Below are positions 6,622 through 33,967 of a DNA stretch of 64,000 bases, in pieces. The stretch spans positions 248,001-312,000 of the forward strand of contig CDROCS010001143.1 in NCBI GenBank assembly GCA_977020255.1. Direction: 5' to 3'. Within the stretch, counting starts at the first letter, position 1, and every line of letters begins with the position of its first letter. The position numbers and the translations under genes were made by a program. The stretch comes from Obrimoposthia wandeli. Taxonomy: Eukaryota. The notes below the pieces were generated by a model. The model saw nothing but the letters and a program-made list of their open reading frames with translations. It ran no database searches and was not told the origin of the DNA.

Positions 6622-6939
6622 TACTACTTACCCTTCTAATTATGATGAATTGTATGCTTGCCCAATTACTGATTATCAATCCGCTAGCAATTCGCATAAA
6701 TAGCGAGAAAGACTCGACTTAATTATGCGCTTTAACAGCGGTTTAGGCCTTTGGTCTAATAACCAGCCAAAAAGAAAAGCGCTATGATACAACAAAACGA
6801 CAAAGTGAATCGCTAACAGCGAATTTAATTACTAAAAAAAGCCAATTTTTTCTGAATTTTTTAACTTGAATTGTGATTTTTAGAGAAGATTGACGTAAAA
6901 TGCCGCTCTGAATTATTCAAACTCAAAGGTATATTTACC

Positions 6940-7926: not shown

Positions 7927-8059
7927 GCGCTCGAAATAAAATAAATGCTTTGTGACCGTAATAGTACAAAGCGCTTGTTTTAAGACGTTTGTTTAAAACA
8001 ATTTCACTTAGCTTTGATTCGCTTCAAGCTTTAAAAAATTACAGAATAGGACTAAAAAC

Positions 8060-8593
8060 ATGAGTTTTGCAAAAATTTCTGCAGGTAAAGATCTACCAAA
8101 TGACATCAATGTAATTATTGAGATTCCTGCTGAGAGCTCTCCGGTTAAATATGAAATTGAAAAAGACCAAGATGCAATCTTTGTCGATCGTTTCATGGCA
8201 GCGCCTATGTTCTACCCGGCAAACTATGGTTACATCAACAACACTCTTGCTGATGATGGCGACGCATTAGACGTATTAGTTATTACGCCTTACCCAGTTA
8301 TCCCAGGTTCTGTTATCCGCGCTCGTCCTGTTGGCATTTTAAACATGACAGATGAAGCTGGCGAAGACGCTAAGCTAATTGCAGTACCACATGAAAAGCT
8401 AAGCAAAGCTTATGGCCACATTCAAGACATCGAAGATATCCCAGCTCTTGATTTAGCGCGCATCAAACACTTCTTTGAAAACTACAAAGGTCTTGAAGAA
8501 GGTAAGTGGGTTAAAGTTGAAGAATGGGGCAACGCGGCAGAAGCTAAAGCGGCAATCCAAGCTTCTGTTATCGCTTACGAAAACAGCCTATAA
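8060..8593 (+). CDS. ppa: Inorganic pyrophosphatase
   Basis: [34 protein letters not shown]. Confidence 0.97.
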
Positions 8594-8618
8594 CACTACC
8601 TTTATAGCTGTTGTTGCT

Positions 8619-8650
8619 AAAAAAGCTCTTATTGATTAAGAGCTTTTTTA
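8619..8650. terminator. Bidirectional intrinsic terminator
   Basis: AAAAAAGCTCTTA-ttgat-TAAGAGCTTTTTT. Confidence 0.8.
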
Positions 8651-8685
8651 TTTACAAGCCAAACATTCATTGCAGATAACAATAT

Positions 8686-17942: not shown

Positions 17943-19299
17943 GGCTCTTCTACGCTTTGTTGAGTGATCCTTGCTAATATCTGTAGAATATTGATTGATC
18001 ATCAGGTAGTGAAGATTGCCTAATCTTAAGCTTGAAATATTCTGTATCTCGAATCCCTCTTGCCCGTTTTCGAATCATGCCAATACTAACATTTCCTGCC
18101 TCTATTCTTGCACTCGTCAGATGATGCTTTGCATAATTACAAATCCCAACTTTATGCCTTCTTAGTGACTTTGCAAACTTCTTCAGATAAGGCATTTTTG
18201 TTTCATCAGCTATCTCGCACCATGTTTCTAACCGTTCGGCCATTCCATCGTAAGCATCTGATTTTAATATATTTTGCAGCTGCTCCTTCAGAACATACAG
18301 TGTGTTCAAATTCATATTTTCACTCAGTAGTGCTTGTAGCTTACACACTTGCTTTTCGCTTAATTTATCTGAGTTTTTCAGTACTAAATAATGCGTTCCT
18401 TTGAGTAATTCTTTACCCGATTTATCCGCTTTTCTAAACTCAATGCGCCGCTGATTTCCAAGCGCTTTGCTATAATTCTGCATAACATGAAAACGATCAA
18501 AAACGATGTCAGCATTGGGTAAGCACTCACGGACAGATTTTTGGTAAGATGGCCCCATGTCCATTGCGATAGCTTCTATCCCTGCTGCCGTCTTATTAGG
18601 TAATGTCTTGAGAAAACCCGAAAAAACATCAGCGGTACGCCCTGTGCCTACCCAGATTAAATGGCCTTCAACCATGTCATAAACAACCGTCATATAATCA
18701 TGTCCCTTAGCTCTTGCTACCTCATCAACACCGATATATTTCAAGTTCTCAAGCTGACTTGGGTCCAACGCAGGTAATGTCGATTCTAGATAAAACCTAT
18801 CCATATTTTTGACCGTTCCCCAGCGCACTCCCAAGTGCCGAGAAACAGCCTGTATGCTCATATGACGGCACAGCCCGCTGACGAGTTGGCAGAAACGCTT
18901 GGTGTAACGACTGCCTTTATAGACGAAGTCGCAAGACTCTATGCGCCTCTCGTTCTTCCCCGTCCATACTTGTGCTAATTCGATTTCTATCGAACAAGGT
19001 AAACCAAAAATGGGTAAATCTTGCACTGAGCGACGGACATATTTATTAATAGTCCCTGTGACAGCTGTCAAAGGATCTATTGCCTTAAACCGTTTGTCAC
19101 GATGACAGTGGATAATGACTTTATTTAGGGTTTGGTTATGTTCTATTTGATTGACGCATTGGCCTTTTAAAGCCAAAATATTGGCTGGGATACTGATAGT
19201 CATATGTATGTTATTTATAAAGTTGTGAGAAGCCTTATATTTCAACAGATTATATGATTCTCAGCTATCCTTTATCACTCACCTAACCGTAGAAGAGCC
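17943..19299 (-). mobile_element. ISL3-family insertion sequence
   Basis: Terminal IRs GGCTCTTCTACG at 17943-17954 and 19288-19299; 8-bp flanks AGGGAACA/AGGGAATA (target duplication with one mismatch). Confidence 0.92.
17974..19245 (-). CDS. ISL3 transposase
   Basis: IGVDE, AIAMDMGPSY, IVFDRFHV, RARGIRD.EYFKLKI. Confidence 0.93.
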   Translation of the reverse strand: MKYKASHNFINNIHMTISIPANILALKGQCVNQIEHNQTLNKVIIHCHRDKRFKAIDPLTAVTGTINKYVRRSVQDLPIFGLPCSIEIELAQVWTGKNERRIESCDFVYKGSRYTKRFCQLVSGLCRHMSIQAVSRHLGVRWGTVKNMDRFYLESTLPALDPSQLENLKYIGVDEVARAKGHDYMTVVYDMVEGHLIWVGTGRTADVFSGFLKTLPNKTAAGIEAIAMDMGPSYQKSVRECLPNADIVFDRFHVMQNYSKALGNQRRIEFRKADKSGKELLKGTHYLVLKNSDKLSEKQVCKLQALLSENMNLNTLYVLKEQLQNILKSDAYDGMAERLETWCEIADETKMPYLKKFAKSLRRHKVGICNYAKHHLTSARIEAGNVSIGMIRKRARGIRDTEYFKLKIRQSSLPDDQSIFYRY

Positions 19300-19529
19300 A
19301 GGGAATAAGATGGATATTTATATCAATCAATAGATTAAGAAGTTAATACACTAGTGTTTCATGGCATTAGAGACTGTGATTTTATCAGTGCAAATTCTAT
19401 ATTTCGAAAAGCTTAAATGATTTATTTTTTATGTACATAAAAAGGTCGCCCACTATGCCTCTAAAGCTCATTCATGTGATCACTGCATTTGTAAATCCTT
19501 TTACATCAGACTCCTGCGCTTTGCGCAAA

Positions 19530-19750
19530 ATTATTGGCCGCTCGTAAACGCCATCTCGATAAGTGCTCCATGCTTTATTCTACCTCCTGCATCCATGCAG
19601 TCGCAGGCGCACTCGCTCTACGCAACATTGCCTATAGGGATATAGGTACTTAGACTTTGCCGGGAGCTAAAAGTCTGCCTGTTGCTACGCTTCAATAATT
19701 TCACCCAAAGCTACGGCGGCAATACAAGGGATTAGGCAGCTTCGTAGCTT
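19530..19750. repeat. REP/MITE-like multi-hairpin intergenic element
   Basis: CTGCAT-CC-ATGCAG (19587-19600), AGACTTT..AAAGTCT and AAGCTACG..CGTAGCTT stems. Confidence 0.45.
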
Positions 19751-19870
19751 GATTCGAGCGTGATGGTTCTTCTTCATATATATCTAACAAAAGAGAAAAC
19801 AACTCTATAACCTTAATAGATTAGTTCTTAGAAATGGTTGTCTTACATCTTCGTGGAGATATGGGAAGTG

Positions 19871-19899
19871 TTGACGGTATACAGGGATAAGGCTATAAT
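19871..19899 (+). promoter_or_regulatory. Sigma70 promoter for the retron operon
   Basis: TTGACG-17 bp-TATAAT. Confidence 0.8.
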
Positions 19900-19905
19900 T
19901 TTGTT

Positions 19906-20110
19906 ACCAGTGACTAGGAGCAGCTCCAGTCGTAAAGTTGGTCCCTAGAAATCATGAATTGATTTCTACTGTCTGCCCCACTCATTTTGAGCGGGGTAGG
20001 TAGTTGAAAAATAGAGCCCTTCCTCACAGAGCACAGCCCCAGCCATCTTCTCTTTTTTGTCATCAAAATGTCTAGCAATGAACAGCGCGTCTAATTGCAC
20101 TTAGAAACAA
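19906..20110 (+). ncRNA. Putative retron msr-msd RNA
   Basis: About 210-nt leader between promoter and RT with hairpins at 19912-19931, 19946-19968 and 19968-20004; a1/a2 repeats not identified with certainty. Confidence 0.55.
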
Positions 20111-20119
20111 AGGTTAACG

Positions 20120-21076
20120 ATGAGTAAAAGAACATTGGAACAAGCATTTAATGCTGTTTTTCATGACAAATATAGCTTTGTTGATTTCTGTTCTATTGAA
20201 GTAGCCAACGAAGTAGAAAATTTCACAATTTCAGATCGACAAATTTTTAAAACCTCAGATAAATTAAAAAAATATTTACGCTTTATCGATCGCGTCATTC
20301 TGCGTTATTTAGCGAAAGATGGGGATGTTGTTCATTCTTTTACTAAAGGAAAAAATACACTAACGGCGGTCCAAGCTCATAGTGGCAATAATTATTTTTT
20401 TCTAACTGATATTAGTAGTTTTTATCCTAATATTAAAGCAGATGATGTCTTGCGCCTTATGAAAAGGGATAGTCATTTAATTCCTGTTTTAAATATAAAA
20501 ACCTATATAGAGCGATTAACTACCATGATGTCTTTTGGCGGTTCAATTCCTGTTGGTTTTCCTACTTCGCCTCAATTAAGTAATGCTTTTTTATTTGAGT
20601 TTGATTGTGCTACTAAAATCTACTGTAAAGACAAGGGCTTAATTTATACCCGCTATGCCGATGACATTATCATTTCAGGCAAAAGCTTTGATGAGCTGGC
20701 TGAACTTAGGATTATAATTCAAGAGCTACTTGTTGAATATGCATCCCCTCACCTTATATTGAAAGAAGAAAAAACCCATATTACTCATCTGGGAAATAAG
20801 GTGAAAATTTTAGGGCTGAGGGTTTTGCCAAATGGTCAAATTACTTTGGATGCCAAATATAAAAAGAAGCTCGAGCTGTTGCTGCATTTCTATGCCACCA
20901 ATGAAAAAAAATATGAGAGTTACCTTGAAGAAGAATTTAAAGGTAGTGAACAATCATTATTCGGTTTGCTACATTATACAAAATCAGTTGACCCATCTTA
21001 TTTAGAAAAGCTGCAAAGAAAATATGGTGTCTATGCTCTTAGAAAGCTCATGGAGGGCAGGCGGAATGTTCCATGA
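20120..21076 (+). CDS. Retron-type reverse transcriptase
   Basis: AVQAH (region X-like), TDISSFYPNI, PVGFPTSPQLSN, YTRYADDIIISG, ILG in place of VTG; 318 aa with no maturase or endonuclease domain. Confidence 0.9.
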   Translation: MSKRTLEQAFNAVFHDKYSFVDFCSIEVANEVENFTISDRQIFKTSDKLKKYLRFIDRVILRYLAKDGDVVHSFTKGKNTLTAVQAHSGNNYFFLTDISSFYPNIKADDVLRLMKRDSHLIPVLNIKTYIERLTTMMSFGGSIPVGFPTSPQLSNAFLFEFDCATKIYCKDKGLIYTRYADDIIISGKSFDELAELRIIIQELLVEYASPHLILKEEKTHITHLGNKVKILGLRVLPNGQITLDAKYKKKLELLLHFYATNEKKYESYLEEEFKGSEQSLFGLLHYTKSVDPSYLEKLQRKYGVYALRKLMEGRRNVP

Positions 21077-22418
21077 TAAGATAACTCTTAAAAATATTCA
21101 GGCGATTACAAGCTTAGAGGTTGAGTTTACTTTTCCGGAATCAAAATTTTTGGTAGTTACAGGTAAGAATGGGCTCGGTAAGACATCGATTGTGAAAGCT
21201 TTTCATTTATTGAACGACCCTCAAATATTTGAAAAGTCGGCTGGTTTAAATTCCGTAAAAAAGTATAGTGAAATATGTTTTGAAATTGACGGATTTGAAA
21301 CTTTTAGTTTTAATGCAAATAATCCAAAAATGGTTTTAGATTCTCGCGATAGACTACCGAACATTGATAAAGTTATCGCAGAGTTGCCAATACCATATGG
21401 AAAACGATTTGAGCAGTTTTCCTTGATCGCTAGTCATGACAATGAGATTAGAAACAGCATAGCCGCAACACAATATAAAGATGCTAGCGACTTAATTTCT
21501 TTTTTATCTGAAGTTTATTCATCGAAAAAATTTGGTGAACTTAAAGAAATCAGTATTGGTAAAAATATTTTTTACATCATTTTAATGCCTGAAGATAATT
21601 ATGTGCGAGAAGACCATTTTAGTTCCGGAGAATTCTTTCTGATACAGCTTTATCGGTTGGTAACATCGGGAGCGATGCTGGTTTTAGTTGATGAGTTAGA
21701 TATAGCACTGGATGCTGCCGCACAAGTTAGACTATATACTGCAATTAAATCACTACTCGAAAAATACCAAACACGGTTGATTGCAGTATCTCACTCTTTG
21801 GCATTTATGAGCACTGTTGATGATGGCGGTTTGTATTATTTGGAAGAAGCTGAAGAACAAGTTACTTTAGAACAGCGATCATTCGGTTACATTAAGTCAG
21901 ATTTATATGGATTTAAAGGCTTTGATCGTTATATCTTGACAGAAGATCCCGTATTGGAAGGTTTTATAGAATTTATCATCATGCATTTCTCAATAACCCC
22001 GTACTTTCAACATAAAACAATTGGCGTAGGGGGAGTTAATCAACTTCGTATGCTAGTAGATAAAAATGATCGCGAGCATATATTTACTGACTCCAAAAAC
22101 GTTATGGCTATTGCCGATAAAGATGTTATTTCTGAACTTCTAAGTGAATATAACGGAGAAACCACAATTTTCTGTTCTCCTGTGGAAGATTTGGAGTTAT
22201 TCATTTTCGAAAATCGTCTTACATTGCTTGCCGAAGTTGAATTGCCAGCTTACAAGGAATCAAGCACGTCTAAAAAGGCCTCCAAAACCTATTGGAAGTA
22301 CCTAACCGTTGATAAAGCTATTAGCGTGAATGAACTTTATCAGTTAATTGTAAATAACAACCAAGACGAAGCGCAGCTGTTTGCTGGTAAAATTCAGCAG
22401 TTTTTGGTAAAAAATTGA
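21066..22418 (+). CDS. ABC ATPase-TOPRIM fusion (OLD-like retron effector)
   Basis: GKNGLGKT, FSSGE, VLVDE, ALD, SH switch; TOPRIM ILTED, GVGG, IADKD; ATG at 21066 overlaps the RT stop. Confidence 0.82.
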   Translation: MFHDKITLKNIQAITSLEVEFTFPESKFLVVTGKNGLGKTSIVKAFHLLNDPQIFEKSAGLNSVKKYSEICFEIDGFETFSFNANNPKMVLDSRDRLPNIDKVIAELPIPYGKRFEQFSLIASHDNEIRNSIAATQYKDASDLISFLSEVYSSKKFGELKEISIGKNIFYIILMPEDNYVREDHFSSGEFFLIQLYRLVTSGAMLVLVDELDIALDAAAQVRLYTAIKSLLEKYQTRLIAVSHSLAFMSTVDDGGLYYLEEAEEQVTLEQRSFGYIKSDLYGFKGFDRYILTEDPVLEGFIEFIIMHFSITPYFQHKTIGVGGVNQLRMLVDKNDREHIFTDSKNVMAIADKDVISELLSEYNGETTIFCSPVEDLELFIFENRLTLLAEVELPAYKESSTSKKASKTYWKYLTVDKAISVNELYQLIVNNNQDEAQLFAGKIQQFLVKN

Positions 22419-24503: not shown

Positions 24504-25165
24504 ATGACACATCAAATCATAAAAGATCTAAACAGTCGTTATACCGCTAAGAAGTACGATTCATCTAAACGTATTTCAGCCGTTAACATGGACGTACTAA
24601 AGGAAGCAATCCGTTTATCAGCCTCTTCTATTAATTCTCAACCTTGGAAATTCATAATAATTGAAAGTGATCAAGCGAAACAACGTTTTCATAATACTTT
24701 TGCTAATAAATATCAGTTTAATCAACATCATGCGAAAGAAGCATCGCATACGATTATATTTGCCAATAATCCTAATTTTATTAAAGACGACTACAAGAAA
24801 GTCGTTGACGTTGAAGTTGCATCAGGTCATCTACCAGAAGAAATGTATGACAATATGTTAAATGGTGGTTTCACTTTTGCCGAATCTAACACCGATAAAA
24901 CTGGTTTTAATGGGCACTGGACAAAAGCACAGACATATATCGCATTAGGTAATACTTTGCACACACTTGCGCGTTTGGGGATTGATTCTACGCCAATGGA
25001 AGGTGTGGATGCAGATCTTATTGAAGCAAGAGTTTGTTACGAGTTGGATTTGGTTACAAGATCTGACTGGTTCTTGCAATAGGTTATCACTGTGAAGCTG
25101 AAGATTATAATAATGGTCTTCCAAAAGCACGTTTGGCTACTCAAGACGTATTCACTGTTCTTTAA
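24504..25165 (+). CDS. NfsB-like nitroreductase (C-terminal frameshift)
   Basis: RYTAKKYD, SASSINSQPW, DSTPMEG; C-terminus GYH..EDYNNGLPKARL in another frame ending 25165. Confidence 0.85.
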
Positions 25166-25357
25166 GCTCAGTGAAAATAGCCAGGTACTAATCTAGCTTT
25201 CTTGTCTGTCGCTTTTAATTTAAAAAAATGTGACTTAATTCAATGGCAACGATATTTCTTAAGAAGCATCGGCTATCCAACGTTGCACTAGAGCTCTAAT
25301 TCGCAGTCATTGAAATAGAAAGAAAGATGAATTTTATAAAACAACAAAGAGAAAGTG

Positions 25358-26196
25358 ATGAAAAAGCTATTGATTATATTGCTATTTACAGTGAGTTCAG
25401 TCGTTACTGGCCAAGTCGTTGAGCCTACATTCAATAATATTGAAGTAACTAAGTAACAGAATGTTTTATTACTGAGTATCAATGTACCACCTCGTAATAC
25501 GGTTTCAAAAGCCGTACTAGCGGAGATCAATACAGGGCTTAATTTAGCTGAAAGTGATGAAAATATTGGCGCGGTTGTTATTACAGGAACAAATAAAGTT
25601 TTCTCAACGGGTGCGGCAGACATAACAAAGAAGCTGTGGTAAAGGTGAATGACGTATGTTGCACAGCCATAATTATAACCGCATCGAAGAATTTCGAGTT
25701 TATGATCGCTGTACTGGGTATGGGCGTGTAAGGTATAATGAGCTTGTCTTGCGATATTCGAATCGCTGGGGAAAGTGCTCAGTTCCGCCAGCACGAACTC
25801 CAAGCAGGGTTGATTCCTGGTTTTGGCGGAATGCAAAGGCTTCCACGCTTAGTGGGGCAAAGTCGTGCCATGGAAATGATGCTAACAGGTCGTTATGTCG
25901 GATCTGTTGAAGCGCTTTCTATTGGTTTAGTGACCACTGTTGTTTCTGATTCTGAAGTTGTTTTAAAAGCGGTTAGTTTAGGCCAGCAATTAAATGACAA
26001 CCTAAATAAGAAAGCCCTTGCACAGTTTAAAAAACGTATGGCACTTTCTTATAGTGAGACTTTTAAAGAGGCACTTATCAATGATCAACTTACCTTTGAT
26101 GAACTTGCAACTACCCCCGATATACATTTCGCTATAACAAAGTTTATAGAAAAGCAAAAAATAATGAAAAGTAAAATTGCATTAGAAGGCTTTTAA
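25358..26196 (+). pseudogene. Signal-peptide-bearing enoyl-CoA hydratase paralog 1, disrupted
   Basis: Hand translation MKKLLIILLFTVSSVVTGQ..., in-frame TAA at codon 33, INVPPRN, VITG, then CDIRIAGESAQFRQHELQAGLIPGFGGMQRL. Confidence 0.8.
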
Positions 26197-26275
26197 TTCC
26201 AATTAAGAATTCTACAACTGCATATAGAAATAGTATTAATTACCAGGTCGATTAAAAATATAAAGGAAAAGAACC

Positions 26276-26899
26276 ATGCAAAATAAAATTGTTAAATTTA
26301 ATGTAAAACCTGATCAGTGTGACGCTTTTAAAAGCGCTCTTATTGAACATAAAGAAAACACTCAAAAAGAGACTGGTCTCGATAAAATGAGAATTTATCG
26401 TGATGATCAAAACACTAATTTGTTTTTTATTTATGAGCGCTTTCAAGATAAAGCGGCCGTTGATTATCACATTAACCAACCTTATACGATTAAGTTTGGT
26501 GAAGGTTTAGCTGGAGTATTAGAAACACCCGTTGAAGTATTCAATCTAGGTGAAACAAACCCACTTCCTGCTCCTCTTCGTGATGCTAATCCTGAAGATG
26601 AATTATTCAATATTATCTTTATTTTTAAAATTAAAGAGGGGTTCCATAAACCTTTATTAGATCAATTTGAAGAGCATGTTACATCAACTCGAAGAGAAGA
26701 AGATGCTAACTTATTGTTTGAATTATATACGGTTGAAGGTGATGACAATACGCTTGCTGTTTACGAGCACTGGAGAAATGAATCTGCTGTTTGGGATATC
26801 CACTTTAGCCAACCATATTCAAAAATAACAGGTGCGTTAATGGAAGAAGCTGTTGTGGGTGATATGAAACAATACATGAACTTCGTGACTGAACTTTAA
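26276..26899 (+). CDS. Tandem ABM (quinol monooxygenase/LsrG-like) domain protein
   Basis: Two ferredoxin-like repeats with YERF...H...PY and YEHW...H..QPY. Confidence 0.8.
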   Translation: MQNKIVKFNVKPDQCDAFKSALIEHKENTQKETGLDKMRIYRDDQNTNLFFIYERFQDKAAVDYHINQPYTIKFGEGLAGVLETPVEVFNLGETNPLPAPLRDANPEDELFNIIFIFKIKEGFHKPLLDQFEEHVTSTRREEDANLLFELYTVEGDDNTLAVYEHWRNESAVWDIHFSQPYSKITGALMEEAVVGDMKQYMNFVTEL

Positions 26900-26986
26900 A
26901 ACTGAATTTTAAAACAATAAGCCCTGTTAAGTAGAGCATCTTATAGCAGGGTTTATCTAATTTAAATAACTTTAAGGAATTAAAAA

Positions 26987-27298
26987 ATGACTGCTTATTT
27001 TATTGTTACCTACGACGTTGCCGATCCAGAGCAATATGCTCAATATAACCCAGGCTCAAATCACATCACCGGTGGTACTGTCGCTAAACATGGTGGTGAA
27101 ATTATTGTTGCAACCAATGACGTCATTAGATTGCAGGGGGCTGATACTGCGATGAAAGTGATTATTCAATTTCCAAGCCGTGAAGCGGCTCAAGCATGGG
27201 ATAACGATCCGGAATATGCACCCGCTAAAGCGATCCGTTTAGCTTCAACCAAGAATATAAATGCTTTCATTGTTGATAAACTTGTCATGCCAAGTTAA
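26987..27298 (+). CDS. DUF1330 protein
   Basis: AYFIV.YDV.DPEQY, IIQFPSREAAQAW...EY..AK..R. Confidence 0.85.
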   Translation: MTAYFIVTYDVADPEQYAQYNPGSNHITGGTVAKHGGEIIVATNDVIRLQGADTAMKVIIQFPSREAAQAWDNDPEYAPAKAIRLASTKNINAFIVDKLVMPS

Positions 27299-27342
27299 AC
27301 AATTTTGATTTGGATGAAACGTATTATAAAAAGGAAAGGGAA

Positions 27343-29160
27343 ATGAAAATTTTTACGTTGATAGCTTTGTTATGTAGTAGTTTATTAGCAGGTTGTGTTT
27401 CAAATGATCAAGTTGTAGACAATACACTGGAAGTACAAGGTGGTGATTTTTCGCTAACAAAAAAATGGGAAACATCAGGGTTTAAAATGCCTGAATCAGT
27501 CTTTGCTTCACCTGAGCACCCTTGGTTATATATCTCCAATGTTAACGGTGCAGAGCCTGGCTTTATCAGTCGCGTCGCAAAAGATGGGACGATTGATGAC
27601 CTAGAGTGGGTTACGGGGCTAATTTCGCCAACAGGCTCTGATTTATATAAAAATAAATTATATGTTGCCGATGCAAAACAGTTACATGCAATTGATGTAT
27701 CGACAGGGGAAATAACAAACAGTTATAGCGCGGATAGTGCTATCTCACTTAATGATGTAGCAATTGATCAGAAAACGGGTGATGTATATGTTTCTGATGT
27801 TCCTGGTGGAAAGGTTTATCGTCTCAAAGATGGGGAGCTAACTGTTTGGTTTGAATCTTCTGAAATTCCTTACCCTAATGGTGTACTCGTACAAGGTGAT
27901 TATTTACTTGTAGCCAACTATGCGACTAAAAATGGCAAAGGTCTTATGCGTCAGCAGTGGGGGTCTGAAGATCTTGGTACTTTGTATAAAGTCGATATTA
28001 AAACAAAAGCGTTGTTTAGTGTTCCATCCTCAGTCCAAAAAGGCGGTTATGATGGGGTGGTTGAATTTCGTGGTGTATTAATGGCAAGCAGTAATCCTAC
28101 AGGTCAAATTATTACTTTCGAAGGTGATAAAAGTTATTTGATCGATAGCACTGATAGAGGTATCGCTGACATCAATACAGATGGTCAAACGATCTATGCT
28201 CCTTATCTTTTTAATAATAAATTAATTGCTTTTGAGCCTGTTGCTTGGGATCGAATTAAAACGAAAAAAGAGTATTTAGAAAAAGGAGCCGACAACTACT
28301 ATGGCGATGCTGCCGGGAAGTCTATTGCTACGCATGATGGCATCATCAAAGGACTCTTTGGTGGTCAGAAACTAACGGGAACTTGGAATTGGGAAGGTGA
28401 ATACTTCTGTAGAACGAGCATGTTAGGCAAAATGGATTTAGGTTCTGATTGTATCCAGATTGATGTAACAGATAACAAAATGCGTTTGATTTTAAATAAA
28501 GGTAAAGGCATGTCAGTCGTTTATGACAAAAAAAATGATACGACGATACAAATGATAGGCCGATTTCATTTAAAATCAGAAGGCCGAGCTAAGTTTAAAT
28601 CTGCTATGTTGGAGGTTGTTAACGGTACAGTAAATGAACCAGGCGCCCAGGCTATTCGTATGTTCGAAGACAAAAAAGATTCTAACCTTCTCTTTGGTTA
28701 TGAGCGGTTCAATGATTTTAGTGCGGTAGAAGATCACCGAAAACAACCTTATGAACTTGCTTTGATTGAAGTTGCTGGCACTACACTGGTGGCGCCTCCG
28801 GTTGCTTATGTATTTGGTCCTGCCATTACTCAAGAGTTGCGCGCGTCTGATGAACGAAAAATCGATCCAAGTGAACTTTATGTCGTGGCATTATTTGATA
28901 TAAAACCAAACCAATTCGATCGCGTTGTAGAGCAATATAAAAAGCAAATTCCTAATGTACGTAAGCATGAAGGTAATATTTCGTTTAATGCCTACTCTGT
29001 TATTGATAACCCAACGCAGTTAGTTGTTGTCGAATGGTGGAAATCTGCTGAAGTAGCGAGGGGGTTCTCTACTAACGACTCTCTTTCTATAGAAACCGGC
29101 AAGATTCTTACGGAGTCACTTGAGCGTCCTATTCCCGGAGTATCTGGCTTACTGAATTAA
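27343..29160 (+). CDS. Lipoprotein: SMP-30/gluconolactonase-like propeller + small beta domain + two ABM domains
   Basis: Lipobox LAGC; PES, LNDV, PNGV propeller blades; GTWNWEGEYFCR...DC module; two C-terminal ABM repeats. Confidence 0.7.
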   Translation: MKIFTLIALLCSSLLAGCVSNDQVVDNTLEVQGGDFSLTKKWETSGFKMPESVFASPEHPWLYISNVNGAEPGFISRVAKDGTIDDLEWVTGLISPTGSDLYKNKLYVADAKQLHAIDVSTGEITNSYSADSAISLNDVAIDQKTGDVYVSDVPGGKVYRLKDGELTVWFESSEIPYPNGVLVQGDYLLVANYATKNGKGLMRQQWGSEDLGTLYKVDIKTKALFSVPSSVQKGGYDGVVEFRGVLMASSNPTGQIITFEGDKSYLIDSTDRGIADINTDGQTIYAPYLFNNKLIAFEPVAWDRIKTKKEYLEKGADNYYGDAAGKSIATHDGIIKGLFGGQKLTGTWNWEGEYFCRTSMLGKMDLGSDCIQIDVTDNKMRLILNKGKGMSVVYDKKNDTTIQMIGRFHLKSEGRAKFKSAMLEVVNGTVNEPGAQAIRMFEDKKDSNLLFGYERFNDFSAVEDHRKQPYELALIEVAGTTLVAPPVAYVFGPAITQELRASDERKIDPSELYVVALFDIKPNQFDRVVEQYKKQIPNVRKHEGNISFNAYSVIDNPTQLVVVEWWKSAEVARGFSTNDSLSIETGKILTESLERPIPGVSGLLN

Positions 29161-29379
29161 GGCGGGAGGTAAATCTCATGCGAAAAAGTTGGCATTGAAG
29201 TTTGAGGAGTCCGCTATAAGCCTCACTTGTGTAATGCCACTCAAATGACAAAAACAAACTCCTTGTTTAAAAAGACTTAATGGAAGACTCATCGCAGAAG
29301 ACGCATTAAGCGTTGTTGTTTATACAACAACGTGAAAACTCAACAAAATAATAAAGTTATAAATAAGGTAAGGAATACA

Positions 29380-30522
29380 ATGAGAATTATCAAAAACAAT
29401 AAGCTAATGACGATACTGATCTTGAGTACTAGTCTACTATGTAGCCAAATAATGGCTAAAGAGCAAGTCAAAAATGAAGCTTATGCTACTTTTGATCAAG
29501 CAGTCGCTGGAATCGCTTACACTTCAGATGAACGTCTTATATTAACTTATCATCCTTTTTATAACCCAAAGATAAAAGTCGCAGAGCGTTTAGATAATGG
29601 CGAGATAGTTGCATTTCCAAACATGGCAATGCAAACGGCCTATAAAGACGATGGTAGCTTAAAGAATCCAGGTGAGTATTTTAACTGGGTTTTAAGTTCA
29701 AGAACTGATGGTAAAGGAACTCTTTGGATTTTAGATTCTGGTCAAGCTGAGCCAAGAATTACGCCAAAACTTGTTGCATGGGATTTAAAAAATAATAAGC
29801 TTAAAAAAATCATATATCTGCCTGATGGCGTGACACTTCCTGAGTCACAGCATAATGACTTTGCAATCTCTAATAAACATAATTTGATTGTTATTTCTGA
29901 CGAAGGTATTGCAACAGGTCCGATTGGTGACAAAGCAGCCCTTGTTGTAATCAATACCGAAACAGGTCAGAGCCGACGTGTTCTTCAAGGTACAGAGAAT
30001 GTATTGCCTAAGATGGATATGCCAATGGTAATGGATAAAGGCACTCAATACGAAAAATCAGTAGATTTATTCATTGGTGTCGATGGAATTGCCTTAGATA
30101 AACAACAACATTGGTTATACTTTACACCTGTAAATAATACAGAGGTGTTTAGAATTAACATTGCTGAATTGGCTGATTTCTCCCAAAGTAATAAAGCGCT
30201 CGAAGCAAAGGTTGAAAAATATGCTGATAAACCGATGAATGGTGGATTAACGATTGATTCTGAGGGCAATCTTTATTTGTGTGAAATTGGAACACGTACC
30301 ATTGGTGTGATTCCTGCTGATACGCGTAAATATCGAGCCTTTACTTCGGATGATGCCATGGTCTGGCCAGATGGTATTAATGCAGGTCCAGATGGATATT
30401 TATATACTTCTGCTGCACAAATATCACTGTCTGCACCATTTAATCAGGGTAAAAGCTTCAATAAAGCGCCATACACTCTTTATCGTTTTAAACCGCTCGC
30501 TAAGCCATTAATGGGTCGCTAG
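29380..30522 (+). CDS. Major royal jelly protein/Yellow (L-dopachrome tautomerase-related) family, exported
   Basis: Signal peptide; LWILDSG, PKLVAWDL, VDGIALD, WPDG. Confidence 0.8.
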   Translation: MRIIKNNKLMTILILSTSLLCSQIMAKEQVKNEAYATFDQAVAGIAYTSDERLILTYHPFYNPKIKVAERLDNGEIVAFPNMAMQTAYKDDGSLKNPGEYFNWVLSSRTDGKGTLWILDSGQAEPRITPKLVAWDLKNNKLKKIIYLPDGVTLPESQHNDFAISNKHNLIVISDEGIATGPIGDKAALVVINTETGQSRRVLQGTENVLPKMDMPMVMDKGTQYEKSVDLFIGVDGIALDKQQHWLYFTPVNNTEVFRINIAELADFSQSNKALEAKVEKYADKPMNGGLTIDSEGNLYLCEIGTRTIGVIPADTRKYRAFTSDDAMVWPDGINAGPDGYLYTSAAQISLSAPFNQGKSFNKAPYTLYRFKPLAKPLMGR

Positions 30523-30621
30523 GTTTAAATAGATTGATGGTGATTGGTTGCATATTTAGCAATCAGGCATCATCAATTTTAATACGTTAACCCATCCTAA
30601 AAAATATCCCAGAGAGATAAT

Positions 30622-31509
30622 ATGAGTACAATGAACAGATTAAAAAGTAACATTCTCATTTTAGTTACGCATGCAATGCTATTAACAATGTTATTGATGA
30701 GCAATTTAGCGTTATCACAGGAGTCTTCTTTAGAAAATGAATTCACTCATTTCAAAAATATTGAAGCGAGCATCGAACAGTCAGCACTTGTTCTTCGTAT
30801 TAATACGCCACCACGAAATGCGGTTTCAAAGCTTACACTGGATGAAATTAATGCGGGGCTAGATGTGGCTGAACGCAATAAAAGCATTGGTGCAATCATC
30901 ATTACAGGAACAAATACTATTTTTTCATCCGGTGCTGGTGGTGAAAGTTTCAACAAAGCAGAAAAAAATGAAATGAGCCATGCGCTTATCGCACTTAAAT
31001 TATTCCAACGAATTGAATACTTCCCTAAACCTGTTATTGCTATTATTAGAGGTTTGAGTGCTGGTGGTGGTAATGAATTAGCCATGGCGTGTGACATTCG
31101 CATTGCAGGTGAAAGCGCTAAATTTCGACAACATGAATTACAAGCCGGTCTCATTCCTGGCTTTGGAGGAATGCAACGATTACAACGTATTATTGGCTCA
31201 GGCAGAGCGATGGAGATGATGCTGACAGGTCGAATAGTTGACTCAGAAGAAGCCTTATCGATAGGTCTAATAAGTGCTATTTACCCTGACGCTGATGTTG
31301 TTACTGAAGGTATTATTTTAGCGCAACAATTAAATGATAATGTCGATAAACATGCTATTGCTGAGTTCAAAAACCGTATGGCCGATTCTTATGATGAATC
31401 TTACCGAACTGCACTACACAATGATCAAAAAGCCTTCGATAAAATTGCTTCTTCTGAAGAAGCACATGAAGCTTTACTGCGATATATTGAAAAACAGAAA
31501 AAAAAGTAA
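30622..31509 (+). CDS. Signal-peptide-bearing enoyl-CoA hydratase/crotonase paralog 2
   Basis: Hydrophobic leader ending ALS-Q; FSSGAG, PKPVIA, GGGNELAMACDIR, QHELQAGLIPGFGG. Confidence 0.85.
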   Translation: MSTMNRLKSNILILVTHAMLLTMLLMSNLALSQESSLENEFTHFKNIEASIEQSALVLRINTPPRNAVSKLTLDEINAGLDVAERNKSIGAIIITGTNTIFSSGAGGESFNKAEKNEMSHALIALKLFQRIEYFPKPVIAIIRGLSAGGGNELAMACDIRIAGESAKFRQHELQAGLIPGFGGMQRLQRIIGSGRAMEMMLTGRIVDSEEALSIGLISAIYPDADVVTEGIILAQQLNDNVDKHAIAEFKNRMADSYDESYRTALHNDQKAFDKIASSEEAHEALLRYIEKQKKK

Positions 31510-31595
31510 TCGCTTACTATTAGAATTTTGTTCTGTCGTAAGGACGGTTCAGTAAAATAAAGTGAACAGTGAATATGTCGATATTTCCATCGGCG

Positions 31596-32543
31596 TTATT
31601 TATACATTTGTTGATAACCTGGCATATGTGCTAACCAAAACGGAGGAGTACCAATATATTCCTGAACGTCTTTAATAAATTCAGTTACTAAAAGTGTTTG
31701 TTTCCTATGTGGATATACGGCGTAGATGCCGGTATCCATCGTTGATAACACGTGATCAGTTAGTAGTGGAATAAGTTCTAATTGGTCGATGGGACGTTCA
31801 AGATTAAACAGATCGATCAAGGTATAACCTAAACCATCTTTAACTGCATCAACCATGGCTCTGACATCACTGACTTTATAGCTTCCTTTCATCTTATAAT
31901 TTTTAAGTTGATCTCCGTGAGGTCTTTCACTTAATCGTATTTGATCTAGGCTAGTATCACCATTGCTGTAGATAACGGCAGGTAAACGGATAAGTTCTTC
32001 TGGTGTTGATGGAAGGCCATGCTGTTTAATGAAATCTTTAGAGGCAATAATCGCAAAATTTGTTTTGGCTAATTTTCTGGCAATAAGGTTAGATTCGGTC
32101 AACTTTCCAACTCGAAATGCGAGATCAAAATGATCGGCGATAATATCGGTTTTTTTATCATCTAATGAAAGTGTTATTTTTACTTTTGGATGTTGCTTCA
32201 TAAATTGTGAGATAACAGGTTGTAGGTACAGTTGCCCGAAAAATATTGAAGAGGTAATGCGCAAAATACCTTTTGCTTCAGAATGATAAGAGTTGGCTAT
32301 ATTTTCAATATGCTCAAGCGTATCTAGCAGAATATGCGTCTGCTCAAGAATGTCTTCTCCCGCAGAGGTTAAGGAAAATGAACGCGTAGAACGATTCAGT
32401 AGTTGAACACCTAATGTTGATTCTAATTTTTTTATTTGCTTAGAAAGCGATGAATTATCCATGTCACGTAATGTAGCTGCCTTTGCAAAAGAGCCCTGCT
32501 GTACAACATCCAGAAATAACGATAATTGGCTGGTAATAGACAC
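31596..32543 (-). CDS. LysR family regulator
   Basis: GSFAKAA, LSKQIKKLE..LGVQLLNRSTRS, FDLAFR; GTG start behind an AAAGGA RBS. Confidence 0.92.
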   Translation of the reverse strand: MSITSQLSLFLDVVQQGSFAKAATLRDMDNSSLSKQIKKLESTLGVQLLNRSTRSFSLTSAGEDILEQTHILLDTLEHIENIANSYHSEAKGILRITSSIFFGQLYLQPVISQFMKQHPKVKITLSLDDKKTDIIADHFDLAFRVGKLTESNLIARKLAKTNFAIIASKDFIKQHGLPSTPEELIRLPAVIYSNGDTSLDQIRLSERPHGDQLKNYKMKGSYKVSDVRAMVDAVKDGLGYTLIDLFNLERPIDQLELIPLLTDHVLSTMDTGIYAVYPHRKQTLLVTEFIKDVQEYIGTPPFWLAHMPGYQQMYK

Positions 32544-32652
32544 ATTGATTCCTTTAATCACAAATTTTATAGATAACCTATCACGATATTACGCCAATTT
32601 AATGCAATATAATATGGACACTATCGTGCTAGCTGAATAATTAAAAACAGTG

Positions 32653-32781
32653 GGTTGTGTCGCAAAGTTTGGCTCCGTTGCAAACCGTTTACCAGGTAGC
32701 TTATCCTATAATCAGCAACTTTTAGCTATAAACTTAGCAGTAAGTTAGTAATCAGACGGATCTGGAGGCAGCACATAATAC
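32653..32781. mobile_element. Orphan IS6-family termini
   Basis: GGTTGTGTCGCAAAGTTT at 32653 directly followed by IS26-like GGCTCCGTTGCAAA at 32671. Confidence 0.65.
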
Positions 32782-33590
32782 GGTTGTGTCGCAAAGTTTA
32801 GTTGATTAATACATAATGCCCGACTTTTCGATGAGCCCATCCAAATGATAAACCTCAAAGGTATGCATTACCCGAAGCACATTATCCTTTTTGCTGTATT
32901 CTTCTACGTCAGATACGGTGTTTCCTACCGAGATCTAGAGGACATCATGCAAGAAAGAGGTGTGAATGTCGATCATGCTACGTTGAACCGATGGGTCGTT
33001 AAGTATTCACCAGTGATTGTTCAACTGGCTAAGAAAAAGAGAAAACCAACGTCTCCTTCTTGGAGAATGGATGAAACTTATATTAAGGTAAAAGGGCGCT
33101 AGTGTTATTACTATCGAGCGATTGATAAGTTTGGTGCCACGTTAGATTTCATGCTCTCTACAAATCGTGACCTTAGTTGTGCTGGAAGCCGCCAGCTACA
33201 AGGTTCTTCAAAGCAATCCATTGACAATAAATCTTGGATGCCAGAGAGAAAGTTGTCATTGATAAAAGTGGTGCCAACTATGCTGGGTTGATGAATATCA
33301 ATACTCTGTTACTTCTCTTTGGCCTCACACACTTTATCAACATATTACGAGTGAAGTATTTAAATAATAGATCATCGATTCATCAAGAAAATAACGAAGC
33401 CGATGATGAATTTCAAAGCGTTTCATTCTGCCAGTGCGACGTTAGCCGGTATTGAGTTGGCTCACATGATTAGAAAGAAACAGTTCAAGAACCCAGATCT
33501 TTCGGATTATCATCAATCTTTAGAACTTGTCGCATAATCACGTCTAAGGATTAGTGTTTTTAGGTTAAATTGAAACTTTGCGACACAACC
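32782..33590 (+). mobile_element. IS6-family element with a frameshifted transposase
   Basis: Perfect 18-bp IRs at 32782-32799 and 33573-33590; YGVSYRDLE, WRMDETYIKVKG, DKSGAN, YLNN. Confidence 0.9.
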
Positions 33591-33607
33591 CAGGATGTAC
33601 GGTATTA

Positions 33608-33690
33608 AGCGCTGCCATGAATGGCAAAGAGCGCTTTGGTTCGCTTTCTTTTGGCCACTCAAAAGAAATGAACTCGACGAAGTCGAAGCC
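33608..33690. repeat. REP-like hairpin cluster
   Basis: TGCCAT-GA-ATGGCA (33613-33626) and TTTCTTTTG-gccact-CAAAAGAAA. Confidence 0.45.
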
Positions 33691-33967
33691 CTTAAAAAAC
33701 CTTTAAGCTATTGACCTAAAATTTCAAAAATGAAATCAGTTAAAATCTTTGAATTATAGTTACTTCCAATCAACCCATCACTCCTTCAACAGGTAGCAGC
33801 GCTTGTTCAGCATTGGCTATAGGCACTTCTTCGCAGCTTTGGTTCCTAAAGCACGCTGTAATTGTCACTCGTGAATTTAACGAGCGAAATTATTGGCCAG
33901 TCGCTATCGACTGCGTCGAAGATGATAAAACTAAGCCATCTAGTCTTGATTATAGGTTACCCTGAGC

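What the first reader, a model, noticed from the sequence alone, without database searches (positions are those of the whole stretch)
24504..32543. Candidate undescribed extracytoplasmic small-molecule processing system
Seen: seven co-oriented genes (nitroreductase, crotonase, double ABM, DUF1330, propeller-ABM lipoprotein, MRJP/Yellow, second crotonase) and a convergent LysR. Four of the seven carry export signals. Established: crotonases and ABM proteins are usually cytoplasmic; ABM members include the quinol monooxygenase YgiN and the AI-2 enzyme LsrG; nitroreductases reduce quinones; Yellow proteins act on dopachrome or bind amines; SMP-30 propellers are lactonases. Inference: a two-compartment pathway that degrades or detoxifies a quinone, polyketide or signal molecule (quorum quenching or algal metabolite). 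I know of no described system with this composition.
Basis: partly seen in the sequence, partly recalled or inferred. Interest (0 to 1): 0.72.

Follow-up and report, generated by a model that had tools for sequence, protein, structure and literature searches.

The report
Two-compartment electrophile-defence gene cluster
This is a real, horizontally shared bacterial gene cluster that pairs exported, cofactor-free enzymes (including very unusual exported crotonases) with cytoplasmic reductases, most likely to disarm reactive quinone-, enone- or lactone-type compounds from the environment; no paper describing it was found.

Summary
Seven co-oriented genes and a convergent LysR lie at 24504-32561, and four products carry export signals. 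As written, the nitroreductase and the first crotonase are interrupted. The breaks sit in two short patches where an independent read-derived contig reads differently, so they are probably consensus errors.

The genes are not a chance neighbourhood. The same families recur together in shuffled order in about 15 other loci, from Gammaproteobacteria and Flavobacteriia. The compartment split is always the same. The tandem-ABM protein, DUF1330, nitroreductase and Zn-ADH never have a signal. The propeller, crotonase, MRJP, acetolactate-decarboxylase-like and SnoaL-like proteins always do (Sec, lipobox or Tat).

The propeller matches CJ1041C, a periplasmic Ca2+ lactonase-like protein with no known substrate. 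The exported crotonases keep the full hydratase catalytic set.

Flavobacterial versions are headed by an HxlR-type regulator plus nitroreductase and end with KefF-KefC. This points to defence against electrophiles rather than quorum quenching or biosynthesis. The substrate is unknown.

No paper describing such a system was found. The scan had separately flagged the intact crotonase in this same window (s1-224359), but not on other DNA.

The parts
24504..25165 (+). NfsB-like oxygen-insensitive NAD(P)H nitroreductase, with no signal peptide. The ORF as written stops at 25082 after a garbled stretch at 25024-25075. The family-typical C-terminus follows in another frame and ends at the TAA at 25163-25165.
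   Evidence: Pfam Nitroreductase, 59.5 bits. NCBIfam NF008275, 146 bits, covering profile positions 2-175 of 217. Sequence read. The X1 contig has compensating indels here. A 69% identical orthologue lies next to a LysR and a propeller in G211.
25358..26196 (+). Exported crotonase 1, a paralogue of crotonase 2 with a Sec-type signal. As written it is interrupted by a TAA at 25454-25456 and a garbled stretch at 25617-25735.
   Evidence: tblastn with crotonase 2 and with P0010. DNA alignment with the G211 orthologue. X1 reads C at 25454 and has many indels at 25617-25667. dN/dS of 0.17-0.24.
26276..26899 (+). Cytoplasmic tandem-ABM protein (two ABM domains, 207 aa, no signal).
   Evidence: Pfam ABM twice. 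Orthologues at 47-58% identity lie beside the propeller, crotonase or MRJP in C4024, L006, L015, L017, L021 and L048. None of them has a signal.
26987..27298 (+). DUF1330 protein (103 aa, no signal).
   Evidence: Pfam DUF1330, 74.6 bits. Nearest solved structures are 3LO3 and 2FIU, both of unknown function. Orthologues at 56-85% identity lie in C4024, L015 and L017. dN/dS of 0.09.
27343..29160 (+). Lipoprotein with an LLAGC lipobox. It has a six-bladed CJ1041C-like Ca2+ propeller (about residues 36-305), a small beta domain (about 319-397) and two ABM domains (about 402-595).
   Evidence: PDB match to CJ1041C, E 4.7e-14, with all Ca ligands aligned. These ligands are invariant in 21 relatives. 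AlphaFold model with pLDDT 84.9. Foldseek gives TM 0.83 to CJ1041C and 0.76 to the tandem-ABM structure 3MCS.
29377..30522 (+). Exported MRJP/Yellow-family propeller with a Sec signal. A GTG at 29332 is an alternative start.
   Evidence: Pfam MRJP, 56.2 bits. PDB 2QE8 (an uncharacterised Anabaena protein), E 1e-67. An 81% identical orthologue lies next to a crotonase in S. livingstonensis. A 65% identical orthologue lies next to a tandem ABM and a LysR in G166. dN/dS of 0.08.
30622..31509 (+). Exported crotonase 2 (intact, 295 aa) with a Sec-type signal and a complete hydratase active site.
   Evidence: Pfam ECH_1, 197.9 bits. It belongs to a clade of at least 39 clusters, all with Sec or Tat N-termini. 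Oxyanion hole A105/G149 and catalytic E152/E172 align with Ms3HPCD A65/G110/E113/E133 (PMC6048173). dN/dS of 0.11.
31596..32561 (-). LysR-type regulator, convergent with the operon.
   Evidence: Pfam HTH_1 plus LysR_substrate. Orthologues at 68-71% identity lie beside related modules in L015 (also convergent with a ZnADH-NTR-ABM2-CMD operon) and L023. Homologues at 44-50% identity lie beside the crotonase or propeller in L005, L020, L023, L032 and L033.

Best explanation
The region encodes a LysR-associated, horizontally mobile and modular enzyme set. It most likely neutralises a reactive, membrane-permeant small molecule in two compartments. Candidate classes are conjugated electrophiles such as quinones or quinone-imines, enones and enals, or unsaturated lactones, probably of host or algal origin.

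Proposed periplasmic arm. These enzymes need no organic cofactor such as NAD(P)H, ATP or a flavin:
- the CJ1041C-like Ca2+ propeller, which opens or cleaves an ester or lactone bond;
- its two fused ABM domains, which perform cofactor-free oxygenation or tautomerisation of the enol or quinol formed;
- the MRJP/Yellow propeller, which performs tautomerisation or binding of a quinonoid species;
- the Sec/Tat-exported crotonases, which hydrate an alpha,beta-unsaturated carbonyl in their oxyanion hole.

Proposed cytoplasmic arm. It deals with whatever enters the cell:
- the NfsB-like nitroreductase, joined in relatives by a 313-aa Zn-ADH or quinone-oxidoreductase type enzyme, reduces it with NAD(P)H;
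- the tandem-ABM protein and DUF1330 process the reduced product.

Shown: gene identities, conserved export signals, conserved compartment split, conserved Ca ligands and hydratase residues, recurrent co-localisation across two phyla, purifying selection, and a stress-defence neighbourhood.

Inferred: the substrate class, each reaction, the order of steps, and control by the LysR.
For: 1. Co-localisation.
- The exported crotonase clade was found in 2 of 401 genomes of the order, and the propeller subfamily in 5 of 401.
- The propeller-ABM protein was found in 2 of 381 Flavobacteriales genomes.
- Yet 7 of 11 crotonase loci have the propeller within 3 kb: the window, C4024, L005, L020, L021, L023 and the fusion P0019. 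Two have MRJP: the window and L001.
- ABM2 and DUF1330 or Zn-ADH accompany the propeller in L006, L015, L016, L017, L050 and L051.
- L021 reproduces the order LysR, NTR, ABM2, (AALD-)propeller-ABM, crotonase.
- Fusion proteins join AALD, propeller and ABM (P0128, L021) or propeller and crotonase (P0019).

2. Compartment split. It is identical in every locus, and 14 crotonases carry twin-arginine motifs.

3. Catalytic apparatus.
- The Ca1 ligands (E, N, N, D) and Ca2 ligands (D, D) of CJ1041C are invariant (PMC13578688).
- The crotonase oxyanion hole and both glutamates are kept (PMC6048173).

4. Defence context.
- Flavobacterial operons start with an HxlR-type regulator plus nitroreductase and end with aldehyde dehydrogenase, KefF and KefC.
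- Kef is a dedicated electrophile defence (PMC10224563). MarR/DUF24-HxlR regulators sense quinones, diamide and aldehydes and control nitroreductases (PMC3351151).
- GST, glyoxalase, AhpC/redoxin, DsbA and CMD/AhpD genes lie nearby in other loci.

5. Missing catabolic and biosynthetic genes. No locus has a conserved transporter, CoA ligase, thiolase or PKS/NRPS gene. This fits detoxification of a permeant compound better than catabolism or biosynthesis.

6. Purifying selection. dN/dS is 0.08-0.24.
Against: - No substrate is identified and no enzyme of the set has been assayed.
- CJ1041C, the only studied relative of the propeller, hydrolysed none of the standard lactones or phenyl acetate (PMC13578688).
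- The crotonases keep 2 of the 3 basic residues that hold the phospho-ADP part of CoA in Ms3HPCD (R65 and K291; T99 replaces the third). By sequence they therefore look like genuine CoA-thioester enzymes, and no such substrate is known in the periplasm.
- The cluster is modular. MRJP orthologues and crotonases also occur alone (L003, L022, L026, L049). The window may therefore join modules that act on different compounds.
- The Kef, HxlR and aldehyde dehydrogenase genes are in relatives, not in this window.
- Signal peptides were judged by eye and by simple hydrophobicity scoring, not with a trained predictor.
Confidence: 0.55

Rival explanations
1. Nutrient catabolism. The cluster would be the upper, periplasm-initiated part of a pathway that lets the bacterium grow on an algal or host aromatic, lactone or polyphenol compound.
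For: - The family occurs mainly in marine Flavobacteriia, Pseudoalteromonas, Shewanella and Granulosicoccus.
- Lacinutrix has a DcaP-like porin, a permease, an aminotransferase and an aldehyde dehydrogenase next to the core.
- A TonB-dependent-receptor-sized protein lies near the MRJP orthologue in G232.
Against: - No conserved inner-membrane transporter is present.
- No ring-cleavage dioxygenase, CoA ligase, thiolase or other link to central metabolism is shared between loci.
- The neighbours that do recur are stress-defence genes (Kef, HxlR, GST, CMD).
Confidence: 0.15
2. Chance juxtaposition. The window joins two or three unrelated modules in a variable region next to an ISL3 transposase and a retron, with no common pathway. 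The modules would be NTR-crotonase 1, ABM2-DUF1330-propeller-ABM, and MRJP-crotonase 2.
For: - The modules have different nearest relatives. MRJP and crotonase 2 are 81% and 71% identical to S. livingstonensis. DUF1330 and LysR are 85% and 71% identical to Pseudoalteromonas. The propeller is 65-76% identical to Granulosicoccus.
- Metagenome X2 holds only 26407-29124.
- MRJP occurs in 23 of 401 genomes, mostly without the others.
- Mobile and defence genes lie upstream.
Against: - The same families are re-associated in many different orders and even fused (C4024, L021, L005, L023, L048, P0019, P0128).
- Orthologous LysR genes accompany both the crotonase and the ABM modules.
Confidence: 0.1
3. 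Signal interference. This would be a periplasmic quorum-quenching or signal-processing system acting on AHL lactones, AI-2-type diketones or DSF-type enoic acids.
For: - The propeller is lactonase-like.
- The best PDB and NCBIfam hits of the ABM domains are LsrG.
- Crotonase-fold enzymes make and degrade DSF signals (own knowledge).
Against: - The LsrG match is generic: 44 bits against a 135-bit cut-off, E 1e-6.
- Crotonase 2 is nearest to ordinary short-chain hydratases (E 1e-37) and much farther from the DSF-family enzyme DspI (5WYB, E 6e-24).
- No luxI/luxR, lsr or rpf genes lie in any locus.
- CJ1041C was inactive on the lactones tested (PMC13578688). AHLs were not among them.
Confidence: 0.08
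4. Biosynthetic tailoring. The enzymes would finish a secreted aromatic polyketide or pigment outside the cytoplasm.
For: ABM and SnoaL-like proteins are classic aromatic-polyketide tailoring enzymes (own knowledge: ActVA-Orf6, SnoaL), and they are exported here.
Against: - No PKS, NRPS, chorismate or other core biosynthetic gene, and no exporter, lies in any of about 15 loci.
- The regulators are of the LysR, HxlR, MarR and AraC sensing types.
Confidence: 0.05

Closest known systems
CJ1041C of Campylobacter jejuni (PDB 22GU, 22GV, 22GW, 22GX; PMC13578688)
   Same: A periplasmic six-bladed Ca2+ beta-propeller with a signal peptide. All Ca1 and Ca2 ligands are conserved. Foldseek TM is 0.83 and sequence E is 4.7e-14.
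   Different: Sequence identity is only about 25%. Here the propeller is a lipoprotein fused to a beta domain and two ABM domains, and it is embedded in a multi-enzyme cluster. CJ1041C stands alone next to an MFS transporter. Neither protein has a known substrate.
Canonical enoyl-CoA hydratases (rat ECH 1DUB; Ms3HPCD 5ZAI, PMC6048173)
   Same: About 35-40% identity. The oxyanion hole (Ala, Gly) and both catalytic glutamates are kept, as are two of the three basic residues that contact the phospho-ADP part of CoA.
   Different: The clade carries Sec or Tat signals of about 30-45 residues. One CoA-contact lysine is lost (T99). The usual GAD motif reads GAGG. The C-terminus lacks the final P-x-F tail. 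The partners are exported propellers, not beta-oxidation enzymes.
Quinone and electrophile defence regulons: E. coli MdaB-YgiN, B. subtilis YodB/MhqR/HypR regulons, and KefFC (own knowledge; PMC3351151, PMC10224563)
   Same: A nitroreductase or quinone reductase together with an ABM-type protein under a sensing regulator. In flavobacterial relatives the operon includes an HxlR regulator and KefF-KefC.
   Different: The known systems are entirely cytoplasmic. This one adds a conserved periplasmic arm of a propeller, ABM domains, a crotonase, MRJP, and AALD-like and SnoaL-like proteins.
Allicin-resistance genomic islands of Pseudomonas (PMC7119367; abstract and search hit only)
   Same: A horizontally transferred, multi-gene defence against a host-made reactive compound. 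That paper mentions KefC and KefF.
   Different: The enzyme families differ. The paper was not read in full, so this is an analogy only.
Insect Yellow / MRJP proteins and D. radiodurans DR1790 (PMC4507557; abstract only)
   Same: The same Pfam family (56 bits) and secreted location.
   Different: Only remote similarity to insect members (MRJP1, E 3e-6). The close solved homologue, 2QE8, is uncharacterised. Dopachrome chemistry is an extrapolation.

Membership tests
Crotonase / enoyl-CoA hydratase (PF00378) | Profile match above the curated threshold | tested here: met
   ECH_1 scores 197.9 bits against a cut-off of 27 for crotonase 2. The C-terminal piece of crotonase 1 scores 108.9 bits.
Crotonase / enoyl-CoA hydratase (PF00378) | Oxyanion hole (Ala and Gly backbone) and two catalytic glutamates | tested here: met
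   A105, G149, E152 and E172 align with A65, G110, E113 and E133 of Ms3HPCD. They are invariant in the alignment of 26 sequences (PMC6048173).
Crotonase / enoyl-CoA hydratase (PF00378) | Basic residues that hold the 3'-phospho-ADP part of CoA (K24, K59 and K251 in Ms3HPCD) | tested here: inconclusive
   R65 and K291 are kept across the clade. The K59 position is T99 and varies. No ligand modelling was possible.
Crotonase / enoyl-CoA hydratase (PF00378) | Works where CoA thioesters exist (cytoplasm or mitochondrial matrix) | tested here: not met
   Sec-type or twin-arginine N-termini are present in about 36 of 39 clade members. The location itself is a prediction.
Beta-propeller lactonase, CJ1041C-like | Six-bladed propeller fold | tested here: met
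   AlphaFold model with pLDDT above 90 over residues 36-305. Foldseek TM of 0.83 to 22GV.
Beta-propeller lactonase, CJ1041C-like | Ca1 ligands E32, N123, N168 and D215, and Ca2 ligands D124 and D258 | tested here: met
   They align with E51, N137, N179, D237, D138 and D276 of the mature-numbered query. All are invariant in 21 relatives (PMC13578688).
Beta-propeller lactonase, CJ1041C-like | Lactone hydrolysis | not testable with these tools
   CJ1041C itself was inactive on five standard substrates (PMC13578688).
ABM domain (PF03992); YgiN or LsrG equivalog | ABM profile match; equivalog-level match to LsrG or YgiN | tested here: not met
   The ABM domain is met: 77 and 66 bits against a cut-off of 23. 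The LsrG equivalog NF007791 scores only 43.9 and 17.7 bits against a cut-off of 135. YgiN is not among PDB hits at E below 0.01. These are ABM-fold proteins, not YgiN or LsrG orthologues.
MRJP / Yellow (PF03022) | Profile match above threshold | tested here: met
   56.2 bits against a cut-off of 19.8. 2QE8 matches at E 1e-67 and MRJP1 at E 3e-6. Dopachrome-converting activity cannot be tested here.
NfsB-type nitroreductase (NF008275) | Equivalog score above the cut-off over the full length | tested here: inconclusive
   146 bits against a cut-off of 227. The ORF as written covers only profile positions 2-175 of 217 because of the garbled stretch.
LysR-type transcriptional regulator | N-terminal HTH_1 plus a LysR substrate-binding domain | tested here: met
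   65.9 and 99.7 bits. The effector and the target promoter were not tested.
DSF synthase (RpfF/DspI) or quorum-quenching system | Closer to RpfF/DspI than to ordinary hydratases; rpf, lux or lsr genes nearby | tested here: not met
   DspI (5WYB) matches at E 6e-24, against 1e-37 for ordinary hydratases. No such neighbours lie in any locus.

The most novel reading that the evidence does not exclude
The Sec/Tat-exported crotonase clade would perform oxyanion-hole (enolate) chemistry outside the cytoplasm, on a substrate that is not a CoA thioester or on an as yet unknown extracellular thioester. Together with a Ca2+ propeller hydrolase or lyase, cofactor-free ABM oxygenases or tautomerases and an MRJP-type propeller, it would form a previously unrecognised periplasmic pathway. 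That pathway would quench conjugated electrophiles before they reach the cytoplasm, and would be backed by cytoplasmic NAD(P)H-dependent reductases.
Probability: 0.35. Interest if true: 0.78.

Novelty: new variant of a known kind. Interest (0 to 1): 0.62.

Why it matters
Crotonases and ABM proteins are textbook cytoplasmic enzymes. Here there is a whole clade of crotonases with Sec or twin-arginine signals, and a family of lipoprotein ABM-propeller fusions. Both are conserved under purifying selection and repeatedly encoded together. This implies a kind of cofactor-free periplasmic chemistry that has not been described.

If the cluster defends against reactive host or algal metabolites, it would explain how surface-associated marine bacteria tolerate chemical defences. 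It would also give a function to several orphan families: CJ1041C-like propellers, DUF1330, bacterial MRJP, and tandem-ABM proteins such as 3MCS. Finally, it would supply cofactor-independent hydratases and oxygenases of possible biocatalytic use.

Tried and rejected
- **Pseudogene reading.** I first took the nitroreductase and crotonase 1 to be decayed genes. I set this aside after three results: the read-derived contig, the patchy DNA alignment and the low dN/dS.
- **Single-protein scan of genome contigs.** With the propeller-ABM protein as query it found only one locus, in Lacinutrix, so it was too narrow for statistics. I used the look-up of encoding contigs and the genome search instead.
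- **L005 upstream gene as MRJP.** The comparison was negative. That gene is a CJ1041C-like propeller.
- **Literature searches.** These combinations found nothing relevant: DUF1330/ABM/LysR, periplasmic crotonase, ABM/AALD/SnoaL/MRJP, and Tat plus enoyl-CoA hydratase.
- **Pfam at E up to 5.** It gave nothing for the middle beta domain of the lipoprotein or for the exported 300-310-aa proteins of relatives.
- **Promoter and terminator scan.** It was uninformative, with fewer promoter-like sites than in shuffles.
- **Zn-ADH, AALD-like, SnoaL-like and Kelch homologues.** None was found in the 64-kb window.
- **Not used.** The large representative-protein search, the second structure job and the last word search, because the open questions are biochemical.

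Full report
**Setting**

The window is G000:C1143:248001-312000. G000 is a 1.35-Gb assembly of 6912 contigs, so this is a bacterial contig inside a eukaryote (holobiont) assembly. G+C is 32-40% across the region, with no compositional break. Upstream lie an ISL3 transposase and a reverse-transcriptase/ATPase pair. Downstream lies a GGDEF-EAL gene. The cluster therefore sits in a variable neighbourhood.

**Observation**

- NfsB-like nitroreductase (NTR, 24504-);
- crotonase 1 (CRO1, 25358-26196);
- a 207-aa protein with two ABM domains (ABM2);
- DUF1330;
- a 605-aa lipoprotein with a propeller and two ABM domains (PROP-ABM);
- an MRJP/Yellow protein;
- crotonase 2 (CRO2);
- a convergent LysR.

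Four products carry N-terminal export signals. PROP-ABM has a lipobox (LLAGC). MRJP, CRO2 and CRO1 have Sec-type signals.

**The two breaks are probably not real**

As written, NTR and CRO1 are interrupted. NTR has a garbled 50-nt stretch, after which the family-typical C-terminus continues in another frame to the TAA at 25163-25165. CRO1 has an in-frame TAA at 25454 and a garbled stretch of about 120 nt.

Three results argue against real gene decay:
- Contigs of an independent run (X1, holding 93% of the region's words and probably from the same sample) differ from the window almost only in these two patches. They read C at 25454, giving CAA. Their listed indels at 25027-25069 sum to -2, exactly the shift that rejoins the NTR frames.
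- Against the G211 orthologue, CRO1 DNA is about 95% identical on both sides. It collapses, with seven small gaps, only inside the patch.
- dN/dS of the CRO1 flanks is 0.17-0.24.

I therefore treat both breaks as probable consensus errors. This needs re-sequencing to confirm.

**The exported crotonases**

A word search with CRO2 returns a sharply separated clade, P0001-P0039, at 48-72% identity. The next hits are ordinary 257-263-aa cytoplasmic hydratases at about 40% identity or less.

Full-length clade members carry an extra 30-45 N-terminal residues. In 14 of 39 this is a twin-arginine motif (MNRRDxLK, then an Ala-rich h-region and an AxA site). In most others it is a classic Sec signal. 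The few without one are fragments or have a mis-called start.

The catalytic set is intact. A105 and G149 form the oxyanion hole, and E152 and E172 are the glutamates. They align with A65, G110, E113 and E133 of the CoA-bound Ms3HPCD structure (PMC6048173). Of the three lysines that hold the phospho-ADP part of CoA there, two positions stay basic (R65 and K291) and one is lost (T99).

By sequence these are working hydratases that still look CoA-competent. That is the most puzzling feature, given their predicted location.

**The propeller-ABM lipoprotein**

Its family is small, about 45 clusters. Members occur in marine Flavobacteriia (Polaribacter, Lacinutrix, Maribacter, Cellulophaga, Psychroserpens), Pseudoalteromonas and Granulosicoccus. 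Nearly every member starts with a lipobox or signal peptide.

The closest solved protein is CJ1041C of C. jejuni, at E 4.7e-14 and Foldseek TM 0.83. It is a periplasmic six-bladed Ca2+ propeller proposed to be a lactonase-like enzyme. It was inactive on gluconolactone, gulonolactone, gamma-valerolactone, dihydrocoumarin and phenyl acetate (PMC13578688).

All its Ca1 ligands (E32, N123, N168, D215) and Ca2 ligands (D124, D258) align with identical residues here, and these are invariant in 21 relatives.

The AlphaFold model (pLDDT 84.9) shows three parts: the propeller, a small beta domain with no recognisable family, and a tandem-ABM unit resembling the uncharacterised 3MCS and 3F44 structures.

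**Other components**

- MRJP matches the uncharacterised Anabaena structure 2QE8 (E 1e-67) and, remotely, bee MRJP1.
- DUF1330 matches 3LO3 and 2FIU, both of unknown function.
- The ABM2 match to LsrG is generic.

**Co-conservation**

The families are rare. The crotonase clade occurs in 2 of 401 genomes of the order containing S. livingstonensis, the propeller subfamily in 5 of 401, and MRJP in 23 of 401. PROP-ABM occurs in 2 of 381 Flavobacteriales.

Yet they are found together again and again, in different orders:

| Locus | Gene order |
|---|---|
| C4024 (second bacterial contig of the same assembly) | AraC, Zn-ADH, ABM2, exported crotonase, exported propeller, exported Kelch, DUF1330, exported unknown, radical SAM, lipoprotein SnoaL, MarR |
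| L021 | LysR, then NTR, ABM2, AALD-propeller-ABM fusion, Tat-crotonase |
| L005, L020, L023 | exported propeller, Tat-crotonase, LysR |
| L017 | LysR, then Zn-ADH, PROP-ABM, ABM2, DUF1330 |
| L016 (Granulosicoccus) | LysR, then Zn-ADH, PROP-ABM |
| L015 (Pseudoalteromonas) | DUF1330, PROP-ABM, AALD, SnoaL, and a 71% identical LysR convergent with Zn-ADH, NTR, ABM2, CMD |
| L001 (S. livingstonensis) | MRJP (81% identical), crotonase (71% identical) |
| G166 | LysR, then ABM2, MRJP |
| G211 | LysR, NTR (69% identical), propeller |

P0019 fuses a truncated propeller to a crotonase. Crotonases also occur alone (L003, L022, L026).

The picture is a modular toolkit, not a fixed operon. In the window, a core of ABM2, DUF1330 and PROP-ABM is joined by NTR-CRO1 and MRJP-CRO2. 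In line with this, metagenome run X2 holds a 90-95% relative of 26407-29124 only.

**Compartment rule**

Across all loci ABM2, DUF1330, NTR and Zn-ADH never carry a signal. The propeller, crotonase, MRJP, AALD-like, SnoaL-like, Kelch and two unknown families always do.

The exported set consists of enzyme types that need no organic cofactor such as NAD(P)H, ATP or a flavin. The cytoplasmic set contains the NAD(P)H users.

**What it is for**

No locus contains a PKS or NRPS, a CoA ligase, a thiolase, a ring-cleavage enzyme or a conserved transporter.

The most informative neighbours are in the flavobacterial operons L006 and L051. These begin with a divergent HxlR-type regulator and a nitroreductase. 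They end with aldehyde dehydrogenase, KefF and KefC.
- Kef is a dedicated defence against electrophiles (PMC10224563).
- MarR/DUF24-HxlR regulators sense quinones, diamide and aldehydes and control nitroreductases (PMC3351151).
- GST, glyoxalase, AhpC/redoxin, DsbA and CMD/AhpD genes occur near other copies.

I therefore favour defence against a conjugated electrophile of quinone, enone, enal or unsaturated-lactone type. The periplasmic enzymes would hydrolyse, hydrate, tautomerise or oxygenate it without cofactors. The cytoplasmic reductases would handle what gets in.

This is an inference from context. No reaction has been shown.

**Rivals**

The rivals are catabolism, chance juxtaposition of modules, signal quenching and biosynthetic tailoring. 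Each is set out with its evidence in its own section.

**Novelty**

Four full-text searches found no description of an exported crotonase or of this gene combination. The only studied relative of any exported component is CJ1041C, published in 2026, whose substrate is unknown.

I rate the cluster a new variant of a known kind, namely regulated electrophile-defence clusters. Its periplasmic arm is undescribed, and if the crotonases truly work outside the cytoplasm that arm would be a new piece of biochemistry.

**Limits**

- No trained signal-peptide predictor was available.
- No coordinates were available for ligand modelling.
- Genome samples were drawn from two orders only.
- No RNA data were available.
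- The read comparison used contigs, not raw reads, and listed only part of the differences.

Noticed in passing
window 25024-25075, 25454, 25617-25735, 29207-29270: These are short patches where the window's sequence differs heavily from an independent read-derived contig of run X1, while the flanks agree. Two patches break genes. The fourth is a 62-nt intergenic stretch replaced by 68 other letters. They look like local consensus or polishing errors in this assembly, possibly caused by reads from paralogues or from the second bacterium.
   Followed up: partly
G000:C4024:28600-36400 (L018, L008, L019): A second bacterial contig in the same host assembly carries a tight operon. Its order is Zn-ADH, tandem ABM, exported crotonase (75% identical to crotonase 1), exported propeller, exported Kelch propeller, DUF1330, exported unknown, radical SAM, lipoprotein SnoaL, with AraC and MarR regulators. 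Two different associates of one host therefore have the toolkit.
   Followed up: yes
P0136-P0147: The 612-aa propeller-ABM proteins named from Polaribacter, Lacinutrix, Psychroserpens, Cellulophaga and Maribacter have almost identical first 70 residues. This suggests recent horizontal transfer among flavobacterial genera.
   Followed up: no
P0019 (457 aa): A single metagenomic protein joins a signal peptide and about 200 residues of the propeller to a mature crotonase domain. In it the Ca-ligand Glu is replaced by Lys. It may be a true fusion or a deletion chimera.
   Followed up: partly
L015:12659-13483, L006:5886-6740, L021:5297-7915: The exported alpha-acetolactate-decarboxylase-like proteins of related clusters have a His-rich stretch (alternating His) just after the signal peptide. 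In some they are fused in front of the propeller-ABM protein.
   Followed up: no
L048 (G166:C20) 6921-8726: The orthologous tandem-ABM and MRJP genes next to a LysR contain a stop or frameshift, so they may be decaying in that genome.
   Followed up: no
window 17974-22418: An ISL3 transposase (17974-19245, minus strand) is followed by a reverse transcriptase (20120-21076) overlapping an AAA/SMC-like ATPase (21024-22418). This is the retron-like defence pair also noted by the scan (s1-224396).
   Followed up: partly
window 32562-33967: About 1.4 kb between the LysR start and the GGDEF-EAL gene holds only two short ORFs (85 and 73 aa). This is where a divergent LysR target would normally lie.
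   Followed up: no
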